Assembly: GCF_006345805.1 (NCBI RefSeq)
Contig: NW_021825493.1
Span: 1-15,434, forward strand
Length of the DNA: 15,434 bases
DNA from: Octopus sinensis
Lineage: Eukaryota
Direction of reading: 5' to 3'
Part shown: positions 238 through 14,018 of the stretch, piece after piece
Layout of the letters: each line of letters starts with the position of its first letter
Position numbering within the stretch: the stretch's first letter is position 1
Notes under the pieces: model-generated
What the model was told of the DNA's origin: nothing
What the model saw: only the letters and a program-made list of their open reading frames with translations
The model's database searches: none
Made by a program: the position numbers and the translations under genes

Positions 238-689
238 GCATGTATGCATGTATATATGTATGTAAGTATGTATGTATGTATGTATGCATGCATGCATGTA
301 TGTATGTATGTATGTATGTATGTATGCATGTATGTATGTATATATGTATGTATGTATGTATGTATGCATATATGTATGTATATATGCATGTATGTATGAA
401 TGTATGTATGTATGCATGTATGTATGTATGTATGTATGTATGCATGCATGCTATGTATGTATGTATGTATGTATGCATGCATGCATGTATGTATGTATGT
501 ATGTATGTATGTATGTATGTATGTATGTATGTATGTATATATGTATGTATGTATGTATGCATATATGTATGTATATATGCATGTATGTATGAATGTATGT
601 ATGCATGTATGTATGTATGAATGTATGTATGTATGCATGTATATATGTATGTATGTATGTACGTATGTATGTATGTGTATATGTATGTA
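238..689. repeat. (TATG)n microsatellite with CATG/TATA/AATG variants
   Basis: Directly visible tetranucleotide array; source of the MYVC/HTYI pseudo-ORFs. Confidence 0.97.
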
Positions 690-690
690 A

Positions 691-818
691 GTCTCTCTTT
701 CTATTTGACTGCCTGTATCCCTCTGTCTCTCTCTCATTCTCTCTTTCTATCTTTCTTTCTGTATACCTCACTCTTTCTTCCTCTCTCTACTTATCTTCTT
801 TCTTTCTTTCTTCTGTCT

Positions 819-867
<49 letters not shown>

Positions 868-900
868 TATCTTCTTTCTTTCTTTCTTTCTTTCTTTCTT
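691..900. repeat. (CT)n/(CTTT)n polypyrimidine tract
   Basis: Near-pure pyrimidine strand; (CTTT)n dominates from about 796 to 900. Confidence 0.95.
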
Positions 901-918
901 CTATCTATCTATCTAATC

Positions 919-970
<52 letters not shown>

Positions 971-971
971 G

Positions 972-1004
<33 letters not shown>

Positions 1005-1013
1005 CTATCTATC

Positions 1014-1046
<33 letters not shown>

Positions 1047-1055
1047 GTATGTATC

Positions 1056-1092
<37 letters not shown>

Positions 1093-1093
1093 G

Positions 1094-1152
<59 letters not shown>

Positions 1153-1164
1153 TTATCTATCTAT
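901..1164. repeat. (CTAT)n microsatellite
   Basis: Directly visible array of about 65 units with few variants. Confidence 0.97.
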
Positions 1165-3519: not shown

Positions 3520-4282
3520 ATGTATGCATGCATGTATGTATGTATGTATGTATGTATGTATGTATGTATGTATGTATGTATGTATGTATGTATGCATGCA
3601 TGCATGTATGTATGTATATATGCATGCGTGTATATATATATGTATGTATGTATTTATGTATGTATGTATATATGCATGCGTGTATATATGTATGTACGTA
3701 TGTACGTATCCCTGTATGTATGCATGTATGCATATAGACAATGAATTGAGCAGATAAAACTGTGTGTATGTATGTGTGTGTATGTATGTATGTGTGTGTA
3801 TGTATGTATGTATGTATGTATGTATGATGTATGTATGTATGTGTGTATGTATGTATGCATGTGTGTGTATGTATGAGTGTGTGTATATGTATGTATGCAT
3901 GTCTGCATGTATGCATGTATGTATGCATGAAGACAATGATTGAATTAAGCAGATAAAACTGTGTGTATTTATGTGTGTATGTATGTATGTATGTATGTAT
4001 GTATGTATGTATGATGTGCGTGTTGTGAATGTTTGTAAGTATGTATGCATGTGTGTGTGCATGTATGTGTGTGTATGTATGCATGTGTGAGTGTGTATGT
4101 ATGTATGTATGTACGTGTTGTGTGTGTAAGTATTATGTATGCATGCGTGTGTGTGTGCATGTATGTGTGTGTATGTATGTATGTATGTAAGTATGTATGT
4201 GTGAGTGTGCATGTATGTAATGTATGTTTGTGCATGTGTGTATGCATGTGTGTATGTGTGTATGTATGTATATATGTACGTA
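3520..4282. repeat. Compound (TATG)n/(TG)n microsatellite with two unique spacers
   Basis: Directly visible; spacers at 3737-3762 and 3932-3961 are copies of each other. Confidence 0.95.
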
Positions 4283-4883
4283 TACAAATTTCTGCGCTTA
4301 CTTGTTCGGTAAATTAGATGATAAAGTCGAATTATGTAGGCAACCAAGTTGCTGGAGTGTGCGACGAAACTTTTGACACTTCGTAATTGACTGTACTTTC
4401 GAAAGTTGTAGTTTACTGTGCGCTTCTAGCTGATTAAGTCTGCACAAGCTGTCCCCTTTCGTCACCTTAGGGCTCAGCAGATGGAATAACAATTGAAACG
4501 AAAGTGAAAGTAAGCTTCTCTAGTATATACAAATAGATATACAAATGGAGTATCTATTTGTACGTCTTCTTTCACCCTTTCTCCGCTCTTTTTTTTTGTT
4601 GCTAGTTCGTTTTCATAGACCCCACACAAAATCTTTGAAATAAACGGTCAGCCATTTTATCAAATATCTCTTTAACTTCCAGAACCCTCCAGTGAAGTGA
4701 AAAAACGAAGTCACGTTGAAATCTCATCTCACCAGCGTGATGCCGTTAATAACAACAGTTGGTCTTCTTCATTCATCTCTCCTCTAGATCTCTATCGCCC
4801 GGCAGCGGTGTGAACTTGAATCCTTTTTTCTTTTTTTAAGTATTAGAGAATTTTATAGACACACCATGTTAATAATGTAATTT

Positions 4884-6084: not shown

Positions 6085-7363
6085 CTAGCAGTATAACCCG
6101 GCCTTGCCGGGATTAACTTACGATTATTAAGCTAATCAAGTTCTTTATTTCAAACCAAACTAAGTAATATCGACGTCAAATTTGGGCAAAATCCGTTTAA
6201 ATTGGTTATATTATATATATATATAATATAATATAATATAATATAATATAATATAATATAATATAATATAAATATATATGGGCAACAGACACGAACACAC
6301 ATGTACGTACGTACACCTATTGCATGTTTTGTGCATGTTCATAAACAGAAATGAATGGAAAAATGTTGTTAAATTTGTAGATTAACACTCGCACGATTTT
6401 CACTAAGAAAAATAATCGTTTTTTTTTGCGTGGAATCAATTACTCTGGCCTCCTAATATACTACAAAACCCTTTTTGTGGTCCGTGAAACGGAGTGGGTG
6501 TGGTGGAAGCCTCGGAAATTGTACCCATTTATATTGTGCAATTCACTGACAAATTGCTACTCACCTCTTTGTTTCTTTGTTGTTAAATAAATGGATAGTC
6601 AACAAAACACTCTTTTACTCGGCGTAAAGTAAAAACAAAACTCTTCGCGCCCAAAGTAATGTGTGAGAGAGAGAGGTGGGGGTGGGGAGAAAGATGAACG
6701 ACTTAAAATAAATAAATGATTCAAAATAAATATATTGTAATTGTTGTGTGAGAAAGTATAAATACTATGATTATAAAATATAGTGTCTTTCAAAAACATC
6801 CTCAATTTGAACACTATATCTCGTGTTTAAGAGAAGAAAAAACATTTTAAATTTTATATTTTATGAACGTCGTCACTTTCTCTCTCTCCCTCTCTCACTT
6901 TGTCTTTCCCGTGAAACTCTCTGCTTCTCTTCCACTTTCTTTATCTTGTTTTTATTTTTGTTAGACGCCGTCAGAAAGCTATGGCTGAAAATAGATTTTT
7001 AGGAACGTCGTCACTTACTCTCTCTTCCTCTGTCACTTTGTCTTTCCCGTGAAACTATCTGCCTCTCTTCTTCCACTTTTCTTTATCTGTTTTTTTTTGT
7101 TAGACGCCGTCAAAAAGCTATGGCTGAAAATAGATTTTTACCGCAAAAAGTTATGGATGAAAATAGATTTTTACCGCTATCCGCGGGTGCCTCGGGAAAA
7201 AAATAAGTTGACAAAACCCAGATAGGATGTTGACGAATGTCCTCCTAAATTTGAACGACATGCGTGCTAATTTGTGGATGAGCATAAACTACAATCACGT
7301 ACACACACACACACACATCTTGCCGTATCTGTATATATATCTGTATATATTTATATATACAGA
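6085..7363 (-). mobile_element. Non-autonomous Helitron-like element (possibly two fused elements)
   Basis: 3'-CTAG at 6085-6088 followed by T; perfect hairpin CCCGGC-CTT-GCCGGG (6097-6111) 8 nt from it; candidate 5' A|TC at 7363 with the same TC-(TA)n-(GT)n architecture as 5424-5818. Internal (TATAA)n at about 6221-6270 and a 138-bp tandem pair (6865-7002, 7003-7140). Continuity across 6320-6860 is not proven. Confidence 0.7.
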
Positions 7364-7711: not shown

Positions 7712-10700
7712 GTGCCGAAAGAGATCAAAGAGGAGTCCCGAAAGAGATCAAAGAGGGTGCCGAAAGAGATCAAAAATGGTCCCGAAAGAGATCTAAGAGA
7801 AGTCCCGAAAGAGATCAAAGAGGAGTCCCGAAAGAGATCAATGAGGAGTCCGAAAAGAGATCAAAGAGGGTCCCGAAAGAGATCAAAAAGGAGCCCCGAA
7901 AGAGATCAAAGAGGGTGCCGACAGAGATCAAAGAGGAGTCCCGAAAGAGATCAAAGAGGGTGCTGAAAGAGATTAAAGAGGAGTCCCGAAAGAGATCAAT
8001 GAGGAGTCCGGAAATAGACCAAAGAGGGTGCCGAAAAAGATAAAAAAGGAGCCCCGAAAGAGATCAAAGAGGGTGCCGAAAGAGATCAAAGAGGAGTCTC
8101 GAAAGATATCAAAGAGGGTGCCGAAAGAGATCAAATAGGGTGCCGACAGGGATCAAAGAGGGCGCCGACATAGATGAAAGAGGGCACCGACAGAAATCAA
8201 AGAGTGTGCCGACAGAGATCAAAGAGGGGGTGTCGACAGAGATCAAAGAAAGTGCCGACAGAGATCAAAGAGGGTGCCGAAAGAGATCAAAGAGGGTGCC
8301 GAAAGAGATCAAAGAGGATGCCAACAGAGATCAAAGAGGGTGCCGACAGAGATAAAAGATGGTGCCGAAAGAGATCCAAGAGGGCGCCGACATAGATCAA
8401 AGAGGGCACCGACAGAGATCAAAGAGTGTGCCGACAGAGATCAAAGAGGGTGTGTCGACAGAGATCAAAGAAAGTGCCGACAGAGATCAAAGAGGGTGCC
8501 GAAAGAGATCAAAGACGGTGCCGATAGTGATCAAATAAGGTGCCGAAAGAGAGCAAAGAGGATGTCGACAGAGATCAAAGAGGGTGCCGACATAGATCAA
8601 AGAGGGTGCTGACAGTGATCAAAGAGGGTGCCGACAGAGATCAAAGAGGGTGCTGACATAGATCAAAGAGGGTGCCGACAGAGATCAAAGATGGTGCCGA
8701 ATGAGACGAAAGGGGTGCCGAAAAAGATCAAAAAGGGTGCCGAAAGATATCAAAGAGGGTGCCGAAAGAGATCAAAGAGGAGTCCCGAAAGAGATCAAAG
8801 AGGAGTCCCGAAAGAGATCAAAGAGAGTGCCGACAGAGATCAAAGAGGGTACCGACAGAGATCAAAGAGGGTGCAGACATAGATCAAAGAGGGTGCTGTC
8901 AGTGGTCAAAGAGGGTGCTGTCAGTGATCAAAGAGGGTGCCGACAGAGATCAAAGATGGTGCCGAAAGAGACAAAAGAGGGTGCCGAAAAAGATCAAAAA
9001 GGATCCCCGAGAGAGATCAAAGAGGCTGCCGAAAGATATCAAAGAGAGTCCCGAAAGAGATCAATGAGGAGTCCGGAAAGAGATCAAAGAGGGCGCCGAC
9101 ATAGATCAAAGAGGGCGCCGACAGAGATCAAAGAAATTGCCGACAGAGATCAAAGATGGTGCCGAAAGGGATCAAAGAGGTCACCGACAGTATCAAAGAT
9201 GGTGCCGAAAGATATCAAAGAGGGTACCGACAGAGATCAGAGATGGTGCCGAAAGAGACAAAAGAGGTTGCCGAAAAAGATCAAAAAGGATCCCCGAAAG
9301 AGATCAAAGAGGGTGCCGAAAGATATCAAAGAGGGTGCCGACAGAGATCAAAGAGAGTCCCGAAAGAGATCACTGAGGAGTCCTGAAAGAGATCAAAGAG
9401 GGCACCGACATAGATCAAAGAAAGCGCTGACAGAGATCAAAGACGGTGGCGACAGAGATCAAAGAGGGGGTGTCGACAGAGATCAATGAAAGTGCCGATA
9501 GAGATCAAAGATGGTGCCGAAAGAGATCAAAGAGGGCGCCGACAGAGATCAAAGATGGTGCCGAAAGATATCAAAGAGGGTGCCGACATAGATCAAAGAG
9601 GGCGTCGACAAAGATCAAAGAGGTGTCCTGAAAGAGATCAAAGAGGAGTCTCGAAAAAGATCAAAGATAGTCCCGAAAGAGATCAAAGAGTCCCGAAAGA
9701 GATCAAAGAGAGTGCCGAAAGATATCAAAGAGGGTGCCGAAAGAGATCAAAGAGGGTGCCGACAGGGATCAATGAGGGCGTCGACATAGATCAAAGAGGG
9801 CGCCGACAGAGATCAAAGAGGGCGTCGACAGAGATCAAAGAGGGTGCCGACAGCGATCAAAGATGGTGCCGACATCGATCAAAGAGTCCCGAAAGATATC
9901 AAAGAGGGTGCCGAAAGAGATTTATGAGGGTGCCGACAGGGATCAAAGAGGGTGTCGACATAGATCAAAGATGGTGCCGATGAGATCAAAGAGGGTGCCG
10001 AAAGAGATCAAAGAGGGCGCCGACAGAGATCAAAGATGGTGCCGAAAGATATCAAAGAGGGTGCCGACATAGATCAAAGAGGGCGTCGACAAAGATCAAA
10101 GAGGTGTCCTGAAAGAGATCAAAGAGGAGTCTCGAAAAAGATCAAAGATAGTCCCGAAAGAGATCAAAGAGTCCCGAAAGAGATCAAAGAGAGTGCCGAA
10201 AGATATCAAAGAGGGTGCCGAAAGAGATCAAAGAGGGTGCCGACAGGGATCAATGAGGGCGTCGACATAGATCAAAGAGGGCGCCGACAGAGATCAAAGA
10301 GGGCGTCGACAGAGATCAAAGAGGGTGCCGACAGCGATCAAAGATGGTGCCGACATCGATCAAAGAGTCCCGAAAGATATCAAAGAGAGTGCCGAAAGAT
10401 ATCAAAGAGGGTGCCGAAAGAGATTTATGAGGGTGCCGACAGGGATCAAAGAGGGTGTCGACATAGATCAAAGATGGTGCCGATGAGATCAAAGAGGGTG
10501 CCGAAAGAGATCAAAGAGGGTGCCGAGAGAGCTCAAAGAGGGCGCCGACATGGATCAAAGAGTGTGCCGATATAGATCAAAGATTGTGCCGACAGGGATC
10601 AAAGAGGGTGTCGACAGAGATCAAAGTGTGTGCCGACAAAGAGCAAAGAGGGCGCCGACAGATATCAAAGACGAGTCCCGAAAGAGATCAAAGAGGGTGC

Positions 10701-11031
10701 CGAAAGAGATCAAAGAGGGTGCCGAAAAAGATCAAAGAGGGTGCCGAAAGAGATCAAAGAGGAAACCCGAAAAAGATCAAAGAGGGTGCCGAAAGAGATC
10801 AAAGAGGAGTCTTGAAAGAGATCAAAGAGAGTAACGAAAGAGATCAAAGATGGTGCCGGAGGAGATAATAGAGGGTGCCGAAAGAGATCAAAGAGGGTAC
10901 CGAAAGAGATCAAAGATGAGTCCCGCTAGAGATCAAAGAGGAGTCCCGTAAGAGATCAAAGAGGGTGCCGAAAGAGATAAAAGAGGGTGCCGAAAGAGAT
11001 CAAAGAGGTGTCTCGAAAGAGATCAGAGAGG
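7712..11031. repeat. 22-bp satellite, consensus GAGGGTGCCGAAAGAGATCAAA (about 150 units)
   Basis: Continuous tandem array with 23-bp (GAGGAGTCCCGAAAGAGATCAAA) and GACA/GATG variants; consensus is 17/22 purine on the + strand. Confidence 0.97.
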
Positions 11032-11270: not shown

Positions 11271-12198
11271 AAATTTTCGAAAAATTTTTGGGTAAATTTA
11301 TCGGTGAAAATTTTCATGGAAAATTTGGAGGCAAATTTTAGTGGAAAATTTAGTGGAAAATTTGGGGAAAATTTTCGGCAAAAGTTTTCGAAAAATTTTG
11401 GTGAAAATTTTTGATAAATTTTTGGGGAAAATTTTCAGTGAAAATTTTCGAAAAATTTTTATATAAAATTTTCGGTAAAAATTCTCGAAAAATTTTTGGA
11501 CAAAATTTATAGTGAAAATTTTCGAAAAATTTTCATAAAATTTTTGGGTTAAATTTTCTGTGAAAATTTTAGAAAAATTTTTGGTGAAAGTTTTGGAAAG
11601 ATTTTTAGTGAAAATTTTGGAAAGATTTTTGGTGAAAATTTTCGAAATATTTTTGGGTAAAATTTTCAGTGAAAATTTTCGAAAAATTTTTGGGCAAAGT
11701 TTTCGGTGAAAATTTTCATAAAATATTTGGACAAATTTTCGGTGAAAATTCTCGAAAAATTTTTGGACAAAATTTTTAGTGAAAATTTTCGGAAAATTTT
11801 CATAAAATTTTTGGGTTAAATTTTCTGTGAAAATTTTCGAAAAATCTTTGGTGAGTATTTTGGAAAGATTTTTGGTGAAAATTTTGGAAAGACTTTTGGT
11901 GATTTTGGCACCATTGGCCTTCCATACTTTATGACTTTGGCATCTCTGGTCTTCCATACTTTGTGATTTTGGCAGGTTTCCATACTTTGTGATTTTGGCA
12001 CCGCTGGCTTTCCATACTATATGATTTTGTCACCTCTGGTTTTCCATACATTGGGGAAAATTTTCCGAAAATTTGTTGAAAATTTTCGAAAAATTTTTGG
12101 GTAAAATTTTCGGTGAAAATTTTCGTAAAATTTTTGGGTAAAATTTGTGGTGAAAATTTTAGAAAATTTTTGGGTAAAAGTTCCAATGAAAATTTTCG
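11271..12198. repeat. AT-rich minisatellite of GAAAATTTTC/GAAAAATTTTT units, block 1 (interrupted by the 32-bp array)
   Basis: Alternating 11-13-bp units such as GAAAATTTTCGAAAAATTTTTGGT, with longer internal re-duplications. Confidence 0.93.
11901..12049. repeat. 32-bp tandem array, copy 1 (about 5 units)
   Basis: Consensus GATTTTGGCACCNCTGGCTTTCCATACTTTGT; units start at 11901, 11933, 11965 (26 bp, deleted), 11991 and 12023. Confidence 0.92.
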
Positions 12199-12306
12199 GA
12201 AACCCATATAACGAATATGCTCCATATGCTGATGTCTATAAACGTCGATATGGTCGTAGTTGTTAAGTGTAAAGTAGAATCTGGTGTATCGTTGATCGTG
12301 AGGCAT
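12199..12306 (-). pseudogene. rep: N-terminal fragment of a CRESS-DNA-virus-type HUH replication initiator (endogenous viral element)
   Basis: MPHDQRYTRFYFTLNNYDHIDVYRHQHMEHIRYMGF: RCR motif I FTLNNY near the N-terminus, then RY-hydrophobic-F at the spacing seen before the G-x-E and motif II of circovirus-like Reps; truncated by the AT-rich block before motif II. Confidence 0.72.
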
Positions 12307-12313
12307 CTTGACT

Positions 12314-12322
12314 GTAATATTC
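12314..12322 (-). other. Candidate rolling-circle origin nonamer GAATATTAC
   Basis: Fits NANTATTAC, lies on the rep strand 7 nt before the ATG; flanking stem is weak (TCTGGTT/AGTCAAGA with two G-T pairs and a bulge). Confidence 0.35.
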
Positions 12323-12407
12323 AACCAGAATTCACTCTATACAAAGAAAGCAGCAGAAGCAGCCACCTAAAATTCTATTTTTAGCCATAACATCTATTTT
12401 TAGCTCG

Positions 12408-13300
12408 GGGAAAATTTTCGAAAAATTTTTGGGTAAAATTTTCAGTGAAGATTTTCGAAAAATTTTTGGGCAAAGTTTTCGGTGAAAATTTTCGAAAAAT
12501 ATTTGGACAAAATTTTCGGTGAAAATTCTCGAAAAATTTTTGGAGAAAATATTTAGTGAAAATTTTCGGAAAATTTTCATAAAATTTTTGGGTTAAATTT
12601 TCTGTGAAAATTTTCGAAAAATTTTTGGTGAAAGTTTTGGAAAGATTTTTGGTGAAAATTTTGGAAAGATTTTTGGTGAAAATTTTCGAAAAATTTTTGG
12701 GACAATTTTCGAAAAATTTTTGGTTAAAATTTTCATTGAAAATATTCGAAAAATTTTTGGGCAAAGTTTTCGGTGAAAATTTTCGAAAAATATTTGGACA
12801 AAATTTTCGGTGAAAATTCTCGAAAAATTTTTGGACAATTTTTAGTGAAAATTTTCGGAAAATTTTCATAAAATTTTTGGGTTAAATTTTCTGTGAAAAT
12901 TTTCGAAAAATCTTTGGTGAAAATTTTGGAAAGATTTTTGGTGAAAATTTTGGAAAGACTTTTGGTGATTTGGCACCATTGGCCTTTCATACTTTATGAT
13001 TTAGGCATCTCTGGTCTTCCAAACTTTGTGATTTTGGCACCGCTAGCTTTCCATGCTTTGTGATTTCAGCACTGCTAGGTTTCCATACTTTGTGATTTTG
13101 GCACCGCTGGCTTTCCATACTATATGATTTTGTCACCTCTGGCTTTCCATACTTCGGGGAAAATTTTCCGAAAATTTTTGTTGAAAATTTTCGAAAAATT
13201 TTTGGGGAAAATTTTCCGTGAAAATTTTCGTAAAATTTTTGGGTAAAATTTGTGGTGAAAATTTTCGAAAATTTTTGGGTAAATTCCAATGAAAATTTTC
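12408..13300. repeat. AT-rich minisatellite, block 2 (tandem duplicate of block 1)
   Basis: Same units and variant order as block 1; right ends offset by 1103 bp. Confidence 0.93.
12967..13152. repeat. 32-bp tandem array, copy 2 (6 units)
   Basis: Same consensus and unit order as 11901-12049, which lacks about 38 bp across units 3-4. Confidence 0.92.
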
Positions 13301-13301
13301 G

Positions 13302-13331
13302 GAAATCCATATAACGAATATGCTCCATATG
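13302..13331 (-). pseudogene. Second copy of the Rep fragment junction (HMEHIRYMDF)
   Basis: Duplicate of 12199-12228 with one substitution; cut off by the transposase remnant. Confidence 0.7.
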
Positions 13332-14018
13332 ATGAGGAGAGGTCAATTCATGTCAGAAAAAAAACAAAAGAAAACCGTTTAATCAGATCCAAAAGACATT
13401 TGAACAAATTTAAAAATCCATCAGAAGATAGCGTGATTTTGTTTTTCTTGGATGAGAAAAACTTTGTAAAGAACCAGAAAACCAACAGAAGAAATGACAG
13501 ATGGATATGTGCAGATCCTTCTAGGGTTCCAAGAGTAATGTACACAAAATTTCCTGCAAGTGTCATGGTTTTTGCTGTTGTTAGCAATGATTGACATGTG
13601 ACGCCACCCACACGGCATTAGGGTGGATGCTTCTGCGTATATTGAGGTTCTGAATAAAGTTGTTAAGCCTTGGAGTAACAGTGTATGCAGTGGAAGGCCT
13701 TATGTGTTTCAACAAAATTCTGCACCATCACACAAGGCTCAAATGATACAAGAATGGATGGCCGACAATTTGCATGATCACATCACCCCCAACATTTGGC
13801 CTCCTAATTCTCCAGATCTCAATCTACTGGACTACTATGTATAGAGCATCGTTGAGAAAAATGTTAATGAACACCCCCATAGCACCAAAGATTCTTTGAA
13901 AGTCACCATATTTCGAGTCATGTCCAATACGAACAAGATCCACTTAATTCGAGCTTCTAAACAATTTCGACCACGAATAGGCGCAGTCAGTGATGCTTAT
14001 GGTCGTTTTATTGAATGA
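13332..14018 (+). pseudogene. Decayed Tc1/mariner transposase, DD37D (maT) type, 5'-truncated
   Basis: FFLDEKNF, RRNDRW, TKFPASVMV, YVFQQ(N)SAPSH, WPPNSPDLNLLDY with 37 residues between the second and third catalytic positions; ends ...GRFIE* at 14016-14018. Disabled by frameshifts (about 13360 and 13620), stops at 13592 and 13842, and D-to-N at the second Asp. No TIRs found. Confidence 0.95.

What the first reader, a model, noticed from the sequence alone, without database searches (positions are those of the whole stretch)
12199..12322. Endogenous CRESS-DNA virus Rep start with adjacent nonamer
The only non-transposase protein signal in the window: RFYFTLNNY followed 14 residues later by RYMGF matches the N-terminal HUH domain of circovirus-like Reps. 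GAATATTAC lies 7 nt upstream on the same strand, as the origin lies just upstream of rep in circoviruses. Endogenous CRESS Reps are known in various animals, but I am not aware of a described octopus CRESS virus, so this may be a fossil of one or of a Replitron-like HUH transposon. Caveats: only 36 codons, a weak stem, and NANTATTAC also occurs by chance elsewhere in this window.
Basis: partly seen in the sequence, partly recalled or inferred. Interest (0 to 1): 0.8.

Follow-up and report, generated by a model that had tools for sequence, protein, structure and literature searches.

The report
Fossil circovirus-like Rep gene start
A 36-codon stump of the replication gene of a small circular DNA virus (circovirus-like) is buried in satellite DNA of an animal genome; it is a real but dead viral fossil of a kind already known from other molluscs, and the "origin" motif next to it is a chance match.

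Summary
The peptide is real. It lies on the minus strand at 12306→12199, with GAATATTAC 7 nt before its ATG. Direct searches with the peptide found no Rep (Pfam, PDB, word-index protein search, IMG/VR). An exhaustive phmmer search of 1.84 billion proteins found two true relatives, with E 2.8e-6 (70% identity) and E 1.5e-4 (51%). Both start at their own residue 1. They come from short Logan contigs. One is a full Viral_Rep (PF02407) domain with E 1.7e-9, matching solved circovirus Rep nuclease domains. The other contig carries motifs II and III in a second reading frame. So the window holds the first 36 codons of a circovirus-like Rep: motif I and the strand before motif II.

The fragment is cut off by a satellite array. 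A 34-nt remnant of it recurs one ~1.04-kb repeat unit further on (13302-13335), next to a truncated mariner-type transposase.

The nonamer is not an origin. Its count in the window equals chance, it has no stem, and in every relative the nonamer lies on the opposite strand, 82-96 nt upstream of rep, in a hairpin.

Verdict: an endogenous viral fragment and a new member of a known kind. The octopus host could not be verified.

The parts
12199..12306 (-). Rep gene fragment: codons 1-36 of a circovirus-like replication initiator (HUH nuclease domain). It covers motif I and the strand preceding motif II. It has one truncation and no internal stop or frameshift in what remains.
   Evidence: Translation. 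phmmer E 2.8e-6 and 1.5e-4 to P0004 and P0005. blastn 72.6% over 106 nt to L007 594-696, E 9e-13. tblastn E 6e-13 and 8e-11. Alignment with Rep N-termini.
12259..12273 (-). Rep motif I (FTLNN) inside the fragment.
   Evidence: Read from the sequence. F, T, N and N are invariant across the window, the Logan contigs, the IMG/VR contig and the metagenome Reps.
12307..12330 (-). 24-nt spacer before the ATG, holding GAATATTAC (12314-12322). No detectable homology to the relatives. The nonamer is judged a chance match.
12331..12370 (+). 40-nt piece homologous to the region just downstream of rep in the related contig L007 (about 1559-1601). Here it is inverted relative to the rep fragment, so the insert is rearranged.
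   Evidence: blastn 88.6% over 35 nt, E 8e-7. Local alignment score 47 against 16±2.4 in shuffles, 0 of 500 reaching it. Alignment.
12371..12406 (.). End of the non-satellite insert. It holds two 12-nt direct repeats (12374-12385 and 12393-12404) that resemble a motif repeated in the 138-nt tandem repeat at 6859-7175. Origin unknown, viral or host.
13302..13335 (-). Second remnant of the same Rep fragment, about 11 codons (HMEHIRYMDF). It lies one higher-order repeat unit downstream and abuts the transposase fragment.
   Evidence: Direct repeat D5, 95%. Alignment. blastn to L007 at 85% over 27 nt. tblastn E 4.8e-4.
11364..12198 (.). Neighbour: satellite unit 1 (24/37-nt AT-rich repeats plus a block of 32-nt repeats), against which the Rep fragment is truncated.
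   Evidence: TRF. 11364-12232 aligns to 12407-13335 at 87.8%.
12407..13301 (.). Neighbour: satellite unit 2, the same higher-order unit in the same orientation.
13336..14018 (+). Neighbour: 5'-truncated, broken Tc1/mariner-type transposase fragment. It is not part of the viral fossil.
   Evidence: ORFs. Pfam DDE_3 E 5.9e-6. Several stops.

Best explanation
The window contains a dead endogenous viral element: the first 36 codons of the rep gene of a circovirus-like CRESS-DNA virus, plus a short inverted piece from elsewhere in the same kind of element. The 208-nt insert (12199-12406) sits inside an AT-rich satellite array of an animal genome.

Shown: the fragment is homologous to Rep, it is truncated, and its last 34 nt were copied with a ~1.04-kb higher-order satellite unit.

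Inferred: viral DNA entered the germ line as a broken, rearranged fragment, or was rearranged afterwards. The satellite then removed or displaced everything beyond codon 36. Unequal crossing-over duplicated the unit. In the second copy, a deletion joined the remnant to a truncated mariner-type transposon.

The fragment has motif I only. It lacks the metal-binding histidine motif, the catalytic tyrosine and the helicase, so it cannot nick or replicate DNA and most likely does nothing. The neighbouring GAATATTAC is coincidental.
For: - Exhaustive phmmer: P0004 (70% identity, E 2.8e-6) and P0005 (51%, E 1.5e-4). Both match from their residue 1.
- P0005 is PF02407 Viral_Rep over the full profile, E 1.7e-9, 38.3 bits against a cut-off of 26. 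It matches circovirus Rep nuclease structures 2hw0, 5xor, 6wdz and 7lar at E about 1e-6 to 5e-5.
- The second rep piece of the P0004 contig carries motifs II and III: PF02407 E 2.4e-12 and 2hw0 E 3e-9.
- DNA identity is 72.6% over 106 nt.
- The peptide is 45% identical to the Rep N-terminus of an IMG/VR 2.1-kb contig.
- The relatives have the circovirus layout. A divergent ORF has 17 Arg in its first 40 residues. An intergenic hairpin carries the nonamer.
- Among the three copies, synonymous sites are saturated (pS 0.71-0.82) while pN is 0.16-0.26. They therefore diverged as working genes, that is, as viruses, before they decayed.
- Endogenous context: satellite on both sides in one orientation, and a duplicated remnant.
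- No other rep or cap piece is present in the window.
Against: - The peptide alone hits no Rep model or structure. The assignment is transitive and rests on 36 residues.
- The relatives are known only from unannotated Logan contigs of unidentified samples.
- The cap-like ORF has no Pfam or PDB match, so 'virus' rather than 'other Rep-bearing element' rests on gene layout and the Arg-rich N-terminus.
- The host species is unverified.
- The inverted 40-nt piece has no explanation beyond 'rearrangement'.
- The selection estimate uses only about 32 codons.
Confidence: 0.85

Rival explanations
1. Chance: AT-rich satellite-flanked DNA happens to spell a motif-I-like peptide, with no viral ancestry.
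For: F, T, L, N and Y codons are AT-rich. FT.NN arises in 21% of shuffles and FTLNN in 1.5%. Pfam and PDB searches with the peptide are negative.
Against: Two independent homologues align from Met1 across 34-35 residues, at E 2.8e-6 and 1.5e-4 library-wide. DNA identity is 72.6% over 106 nt. A second, non-coding piece of the same relative lies 24 nt away.
Confidence: 0.02
2. The fragment derives from a non-viral Rep-bearing mobile element of the host (a Helitron-like or other HUH transposon, or a plasmid-like replicon) rather than from a virus.
For: - The relatives are multi-copy and degenerate in their source samples.
- The cap-like ORF has no recognisable capsid homology.
- A non-coding piece travels with rep in two different arrangements.
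Against: - The best family is PF02407 Viral_Rep and the best structures are circovirus Reps.
- The unit is about 1.8 kb, with a divergent Arg-rich ORF and an intergenic hairpin nonamer. That is the circovirus layout.
- No Helitron-type domain was seen.
- The copies diverged under purifying selection with saturated synonymous sites. This fits separate captures from a diverse virus population better than copy-and-paste within one genome.
Confidence: 0.08
3. The stretch is really plus-strand coding sequence: the N-terminal continuation of the mariner-type transposase (…GNPYNEYAPYD…), with the Rep-like reading a mirror artefact.
For: At the second copy (13289-13594) the plus-strand frame runs without a stop from the shared 34 nt into the transposase fragment.
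Against: That ORF has no transposase domain hit. In the first copy the same 34 nt are followed by unrelated sequence with stops in that frame. The minus-strand reading has library-wide significant Rep homologues.
Confidence: 0.02
4. The rep start together with GAATATTAC is a retained replication origin plus gene start.
For: The motif fits NANTATTAC and lies 7 nt from the ATG.
Against: - The motif count equals chance, 4 against 3.92.
- There is no hairpin, with z-scores of +0.55 and -0.46.
- In all eight related loci the single nonamer is on the strand opposite rep. In the seven Logan contigs it lies 82-96 nt upstream, within a hairpin.
- The window's upstream sequence is not homologous to that region.
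Confidence: 0.03

Closest known systems
Rep (replication initiator) of Circoviridae and circovirus-like CRESS-DNA viruses (Pfam PF02407 Viral_Rep; solved nuclease domains 2hw0, 5xor, 6wdz and full-length 7lar)
   Same: N-terminal Met-Pro…Arg-Phe-x-Phe-Thr-Leu/Ile-Asn-Asn-Tyr (motif I), followed by the strand that precedes motif II. The relatives of the window fragment carry motifs II and III and match these entries.
   Different: The window holds only 36 of about 290-300 codons. It has no metal-binding motif, catalytic tyrosine or helicase. The peptide alone does not reach any threshold against PF02407 or the PDB. The lineage is distant from named viruses: about 28-45% identity to the nearest metagenomic Reps.
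Endogenous circovirus-related elements (CVe) of animal genomes, including the 'CRESS-DNA group' rep fragments reported in bivalves and gastropods (Dennis et al. 2018, PMC6069186)
   Same: A rep-derived, fragmentary, disrupted insert flanked by host sequence. That survey also found rep far more often than cap.
   Different: That survey's text lists no cephalopod ('octopus' and 'cephalopod' each occur 0 times). Here the fragment is unusually short, rearranged, and embedded in and partly co-duplicated with a satellite higher-order repeat.
Degenerate circovirus-like units on Logan contigs L007-L010 and L012-L014 (runs SRR11869385, -390, -391, -394)
   Same: The closest relatives found: 51-70% protein identity and 72.6% DNA identity over the rep start. 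L007 also shares a 35-nt non-coding piece with the window.
   Different: Those contigs keep the cap-like ORF, the hairpin origin and, in L007, the whole length of rep, though broken. The window keeps only the rep start. The shared non-coding piece has the opposite orientation.

Membership tests
CRESS-DNA / circovirus-like Rep (HUH nuclease domain, PF02407) | Motif I (FT[LI]NN-type) near the N-terminus | tested here: met
   FTLNN at 12259-12273 (-). F, T, N and N are invariant in the alignment with six Rep N-termini.
CRESS-DNA / circovirus-like Rep (HUH nuclease domain, PF02407) | Motif II (HUH-type, metal binding) | tested here: not met
   The fragment ends before it, and satellite follows codon 36. 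It is present in the second rep piece of relative L007.
CRESS-DNA / circovirus-like Rep (HUH nuclease domain, PF02407) | Motif III (catalytic tyrosine, YxxK-type) | tested here: not met
   Absent from the window: tblastn of all rep pieces finds only the start. Present in P0005 and L007.
CRESS-DNA / circovirus-like Rep (HUH nuclease domain, PF02407) | Superfamily-3 helicase domain after the nuclease domain | tested here: not met
   No such sequence in the window. In L007 only degenerate remains can be read by eye, with no Pfam or PDB hit.
CRESS-DNA / circovirus-like Rep (HUH nuclease domain, PF02407) | Significant profile match of the sequence itself to PF02407 | tested here: not met
   No Viral_Rep hit for the 47-aa or 131-aa translation at E up to 10. 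Relatives pass: P0005 scores 38.3 bits and the second L007 piece 47.4 bits, against a cut-off of 26.
CRESS-DNA / circovirus-like Rep (HUH nuclease domain, PF02407) | Sequence homology to bona fide members | tested here: met
   E 2.8e-6 and 1.5e-4 over 1.84 billion proteins, to proteins that are themselves PF02407 members or parts of one. It is therefore a remnant derived from a member, not a functional member.
CRESS-DNA virus origin of replication | Nonamer (NANTATTAC) in the loop of a conserved hairpin | tested here: not met
   No hairpin around 12314-12322. L007 has one, with ΔG -13.8 and z -2.3.
CRESS-DNA virus origin of replication | Same strand and position as in relatives, and occurrence above chance | tested here: not met
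   In the relatives the nonamer is on the opposite strand, 82-96 nt upstream of rep. The window count is 4 against 3.92 expected. The upstream region is not homologous.
Endogenous viral element (EVE) | Virus-derived sequence contiguous with host genomic sequence | tested here: met
   A 208-nt insert sits between two units of one satellite in a 15.4-kb window of micro- and minisatellites with a mariner-type fragment.
Endogenous viral element (EVE) | Vertical inheritance (same site in other individuals or species) | not testable with these tools
   No eukaryotic genome collection is searchable here. The window's ORFs are not on record.
Helitron / other eukaryotic HUH transposon | Rep of the transposon type, fused to a Pif1-like helicase, with transposon termini | tested here: not met
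   The best family and structures are viral Rep. The relatives show a cap-like ORF and a hairpin origin instead. Termini could not be examined.

The most novel reading that the evidence does not exclude
The fragment and the Logan contigs sample an undescribed lineage of circovirus-like viruses. This lineage has entered the germ line of one animal group (possibly cephalopods) several separate times. The window copy was then captured by a satellite array and is being copied along with its higher-order repeat.
Probability: 0.4. Interest if true: 0.45.

Novelty: new member of a known kind. Interest (0 to 1): 0.33.

Why it matters
Endogenous Rep fragments are the only fossil record of CRESS-DNA viruses, and they tie otherwise host-less metagenomic viruses to real hosts. 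If the window is cephalopod, this would extend the mollusc record beyond the bivalves and gastropods in PMC6069186. It would also point to a virus lineage that has almost no relatives among 1.84 billion representative proteins. On its own, a 36-codon non-functional stump has no biological consequence for the host. Methodologically, a motif-I match that fails every direct profile search was still validated by an exhaustive search, while a textbook-looking nonamer beside it was spurious.

Tried and rejected
- **Direct tests of the peptide were all negative.** These were Pfam hmmscan at E≤10, PDB phmmer, the word-indexed protein search and the IMG/VR search with the peptide.
- **A degenerate DNA pattern for FYFTLNNY in IMG/VR** gave six hits on 21-144-kb contigs (L001-L006). 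I took these for chance matches in large phage-like contigs and did not follow them.
- **The top three phmmer hits (P0001-P0003) are artefacts.** P0001 and P0002 are tandem repeats of one short unit. From my own knowledge, the matched stretch looks like the translation of a sequencing-adapter sequence. P0003 is a repetitive protein.
- **Collinearity of the upstream region was rejected.** I first thought the region upstream of the ATG was collinear with the relatives' origin arm and promoter. Local alignment with shuffles put those scores at chance.
- **The idea that the insert ends at the origin nick site was dropped** for the same reason.
- **Host identification failed.** Exact look-up of two window ORFs found nothing. 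No paper cites the SRR runs.
- **Literature searches** for octopus or cephalopod circovirus-like endogenous elements found nothing specific.
- **The cap-like ORF has no Pfam or PDB match**, and the helicase piece of L007 has none either.
- **A JGI metagenome scan and further protein searches** found only distant relatives at 28-45% identity.
- **Rfam and tRNA scans of the window** found nothing.

Full report
**1. The observation**

The finding's letters are on the minus strand.
- Translating 12330→12190 gives FWLNITVK-MPHDQRYTRFYFTLNNYDHIDVYRHQHMEHIRYMGF-RKF.
- The Met codon is at 12306-12304, and motif-I-like FTLNN is at 12273-12259.
- RYMGF follows RFYFTLNNY after 14 residues.
- GAATATTAC (12322-12314, minus) ends 7 nt before the ATG.
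- The mechanical ORF (11929-12324, 131 aa) runs on into the translation of an AT-rich satellite. That extension has no meaning.

**2. Is it more than chance?**

In 1000 dinucleotide-preserving shuffles of the window, FTLNN appeared in 1.5% of six-frame translations and FTLNNY in 0.2%. That is rare for one window, but such matches are expected many times over in a large genome, so the motif alone proves nothing.

Every direct test of the peptide was negative:
- no PF02407 hit at E≤10;
- no PDB hit;
- no candidate in the word-indexed search of 5.8 billion proteins;
- no tblastn-confirmed relative in IMG/VR.

The exhaustive phmmer search of 1.84 billion cluster representatives settled it. After three repeat or artefact hits, two short proteins match the peptide in one stretch, each from its own residue 1:
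- P0004: 78 aa, 70% identity, E 2.8e-6;
- P0005: 104 aa, 51% identity, E 1.5e-4.

**3. What the relatives are**

Both proteins come only from Logan assemblies of sequencing runs SRR11869385, -390, -391 and -394.
- P0005 matches PF02407 Viral_Rep over the whole profile (E 1.7e-9, 38.3 bits, cut-off 26).
- It also matches the solved nuclease domains and the full-length Rep of circoviruses (2hw0, 5xor, 6wdz, 8h56, 7lar; E 3e-6 to 5e-5).
- P0004 is the first piece of a broken rep on contig L007.
- A second piece of L007, in another frame, carries motifs II and III. It matches PF02407 at E 2.4e-12 and 2hw0 at E 3e-9.

At DNA level, window 12201-12306 (minus) aligns to L007 594-696 at 72.6% identity (E 9e-13). 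The window peptide is also 45% identical to the Rep N-terminus of a 2.1-kb IMG/VR contig. It aligns with two metagenomic Reps as well.

The relatives have a circovirus-like layout:
- a divergently oriented ORF with 17 Arg in its first 40 residues;
- an intergenic hairpin (L007: ΔG -13.8 kcal/mol, z -2.3);
- then rep.

They look endogenous or defective. In L007 no frame of the rep span is open (16-20 stops per frame), and the nuclease domain is split over two frames. The same broken sequence recurs at 99.8-100% identity in several runs. The cap-like ORF has no Pfam or PDB match, so reading it as a capsid gene is an inference from layout and composition.

**4. Anatomy in the window**

The non-satellite insert is 12199-12406 (208 nt). 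It consists of four parts:
- (a) rep codons 1-36, at 12306→12199;
- (b) a 24-nt spacer holding the nonamer;
- (c) 12331-12370, which matches the region just downstream of rep in L007. The match is 88.6% over 35 nt, E 8e-7, and the local alignment scores 47 against 16±2.4 in shuffles. Its orientation is opposite to that of the rep piece, so the insert is rearranged relative to L007;
- (d) 12371-12406, with two 12-nt direct repeats that resemble a motif in the 138-nt tandem repeat at 6859-7175.

Satellite of one family and one orientation flanks the insert on both sides. The stretch 11364-12232 aligns with 12407-13335 at 87.8%. The last 34 nt of the rep fragment therefore belong to a ~1.04-kb higher-order repeat unit and recur at 13302-13335 (95% identity). 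There they abut a 5'-truncated, broken mariner-type transposase (DDE_3, E 5.9e-6).

tblastn with every rep and cap piece of the relatives finds nothing else in the window.

**5. The nonamer**

- NANTATTAC occurs 4 times in the window against 3.92 expected.
- The window copy lies in no hairpin (z +0.55 for the 41-nt context and -0.46 for 105 nt).
- In all seven Logan contigs and in the IMG/VR contig, the single match to the pattern is on the strand opposite rep. In the Logan contigs it lies 82-96 nt upstream of the ATG, within the hairpin.
- The window's upstream sequence has no significant similarity to that region of L007 or L010.

The nonamer is a coincidence. The fragment retains no origin.

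**6. History (inferred)**

Over the first ~32 codons, synonymous differences among the window, L007 and L010 are saturated (pS 0.71-0.82), while non-synonymous differences are few (pN 0.16-0.26). The three copies therefore diverged while the gene was under purifying selection, that is, as replicating viruses. They do not descend from one insertion by neutral decay. The sample is small, so this is suggestive rather than firm.

The window copy then lost everything past codon 36 at a junction with the satellite. It was duplicated with the satellite unit. In the second unit it was cut down further by a deletion that reaches into a mariner-type element. The order of these steps is inference.

**7. 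Function**

None is expected. With motif I only, and no metal-binding motif, catalytic tyrosine or helicase, the stump cannot act as a nuclease.

**8. Comparison with the known**

The element derives from a member of the circovirus-like Rep family but is not itself a functional member (see the membership table). As a genomic object it is an endogenous circovirus-related element. Such rep-derived fragments have been catalogued in 675 animal genomes, including bivalves and gastropods. No cephalopod is mentioned in that paper's text (PMC6069186), and my literature searches found no description for octopus or cephalopods.

I could not verify that the window is from an octopus, nor which organism the Logan runs come from.

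**9. Verdict**

This is a real viral fossil: a new member of a known kind, with a spurious 'origin'. Interest is modest. The most useful lead is the small, otherwise nearly relative-less Rep lineage shared with the Logan runs.

**Housekeeping**

In one search I printed contig L007 (1771 nt) before I knew it was a near-unit-length, heavily broken element.

Noticed in passing
window 7712-11031: A 3.3-kb array of about 150 copies of a 22-nt unit (GTGCCGAAAGAGATCAAAGAGG, 82% matches). It gives long open frames of K/E/R-rich peptide on the plus strand (up to 262 aa), and GC is raised to about 0.49. It is probably a minisatellite and not a gene.
   Followed up: partly
window 6859-7175: A 138-nt tandem repeat (2 copies, 91%). 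Its motif ATGGCTGAAAATAGATTTTTA occurs three times, and it resembles (22 of 24 nt, inverted) the two direct repeats at the edge of the Rep-bearing insert (12374-12404). It may be a host repeat family that borders the viral fossil.
   Followed up: partly
window 12331-12370 vs L007 ~1559-1601: A 35-40-nt non-coding piece accompanies rep in both the window and the related contig, but in opposite orientation and on the opposite side of the gene. Whether it is viral (3' intergenic or the end of cap) or a host repeat is unresolved.
   Followed up: partly
window 13336-14018 (+): A 5'-truncated Tc1/mariner-type transposase remnant (DDE_3, E 5.9e-6), broken by several stops. It starts exactly where the second Rep remnant ends. 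The plus-strand ORF 13289-13594 fuses the two by accident.
   Followed up: partly
window 11900-12049 and 12965-13154: Blocks of 5-6 copies of a 32-nt repeat (TGATTTTGGCACCACTGGCTTTCCATACTTTA) lie inside each unit of the 24/37-nt AT-rich satellite. Together they define the ~1.04-kb higher-order unit.
   Followed up: yes
window 240-1164, 3520-4283 and elsewhere: Long tetranucleotide microsatellites (ATGT and TATC types, 100-200 copies) produce the many spurious Y/I/H/T and C/M/Y/V 'ORFs' in the ORF list.
   Followed up: no
P0001, P0002: The top phmmer hits are metagenomic 'proteins' built of tandem repeats containing …SYTHLDVYKRQ…. They match the window's DHIDVYRHQ by accident. From my own knowledge, the stretch looks like the translation of a sequencing-adapter sequence, i.e. 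database contamination.
   Followed up: no
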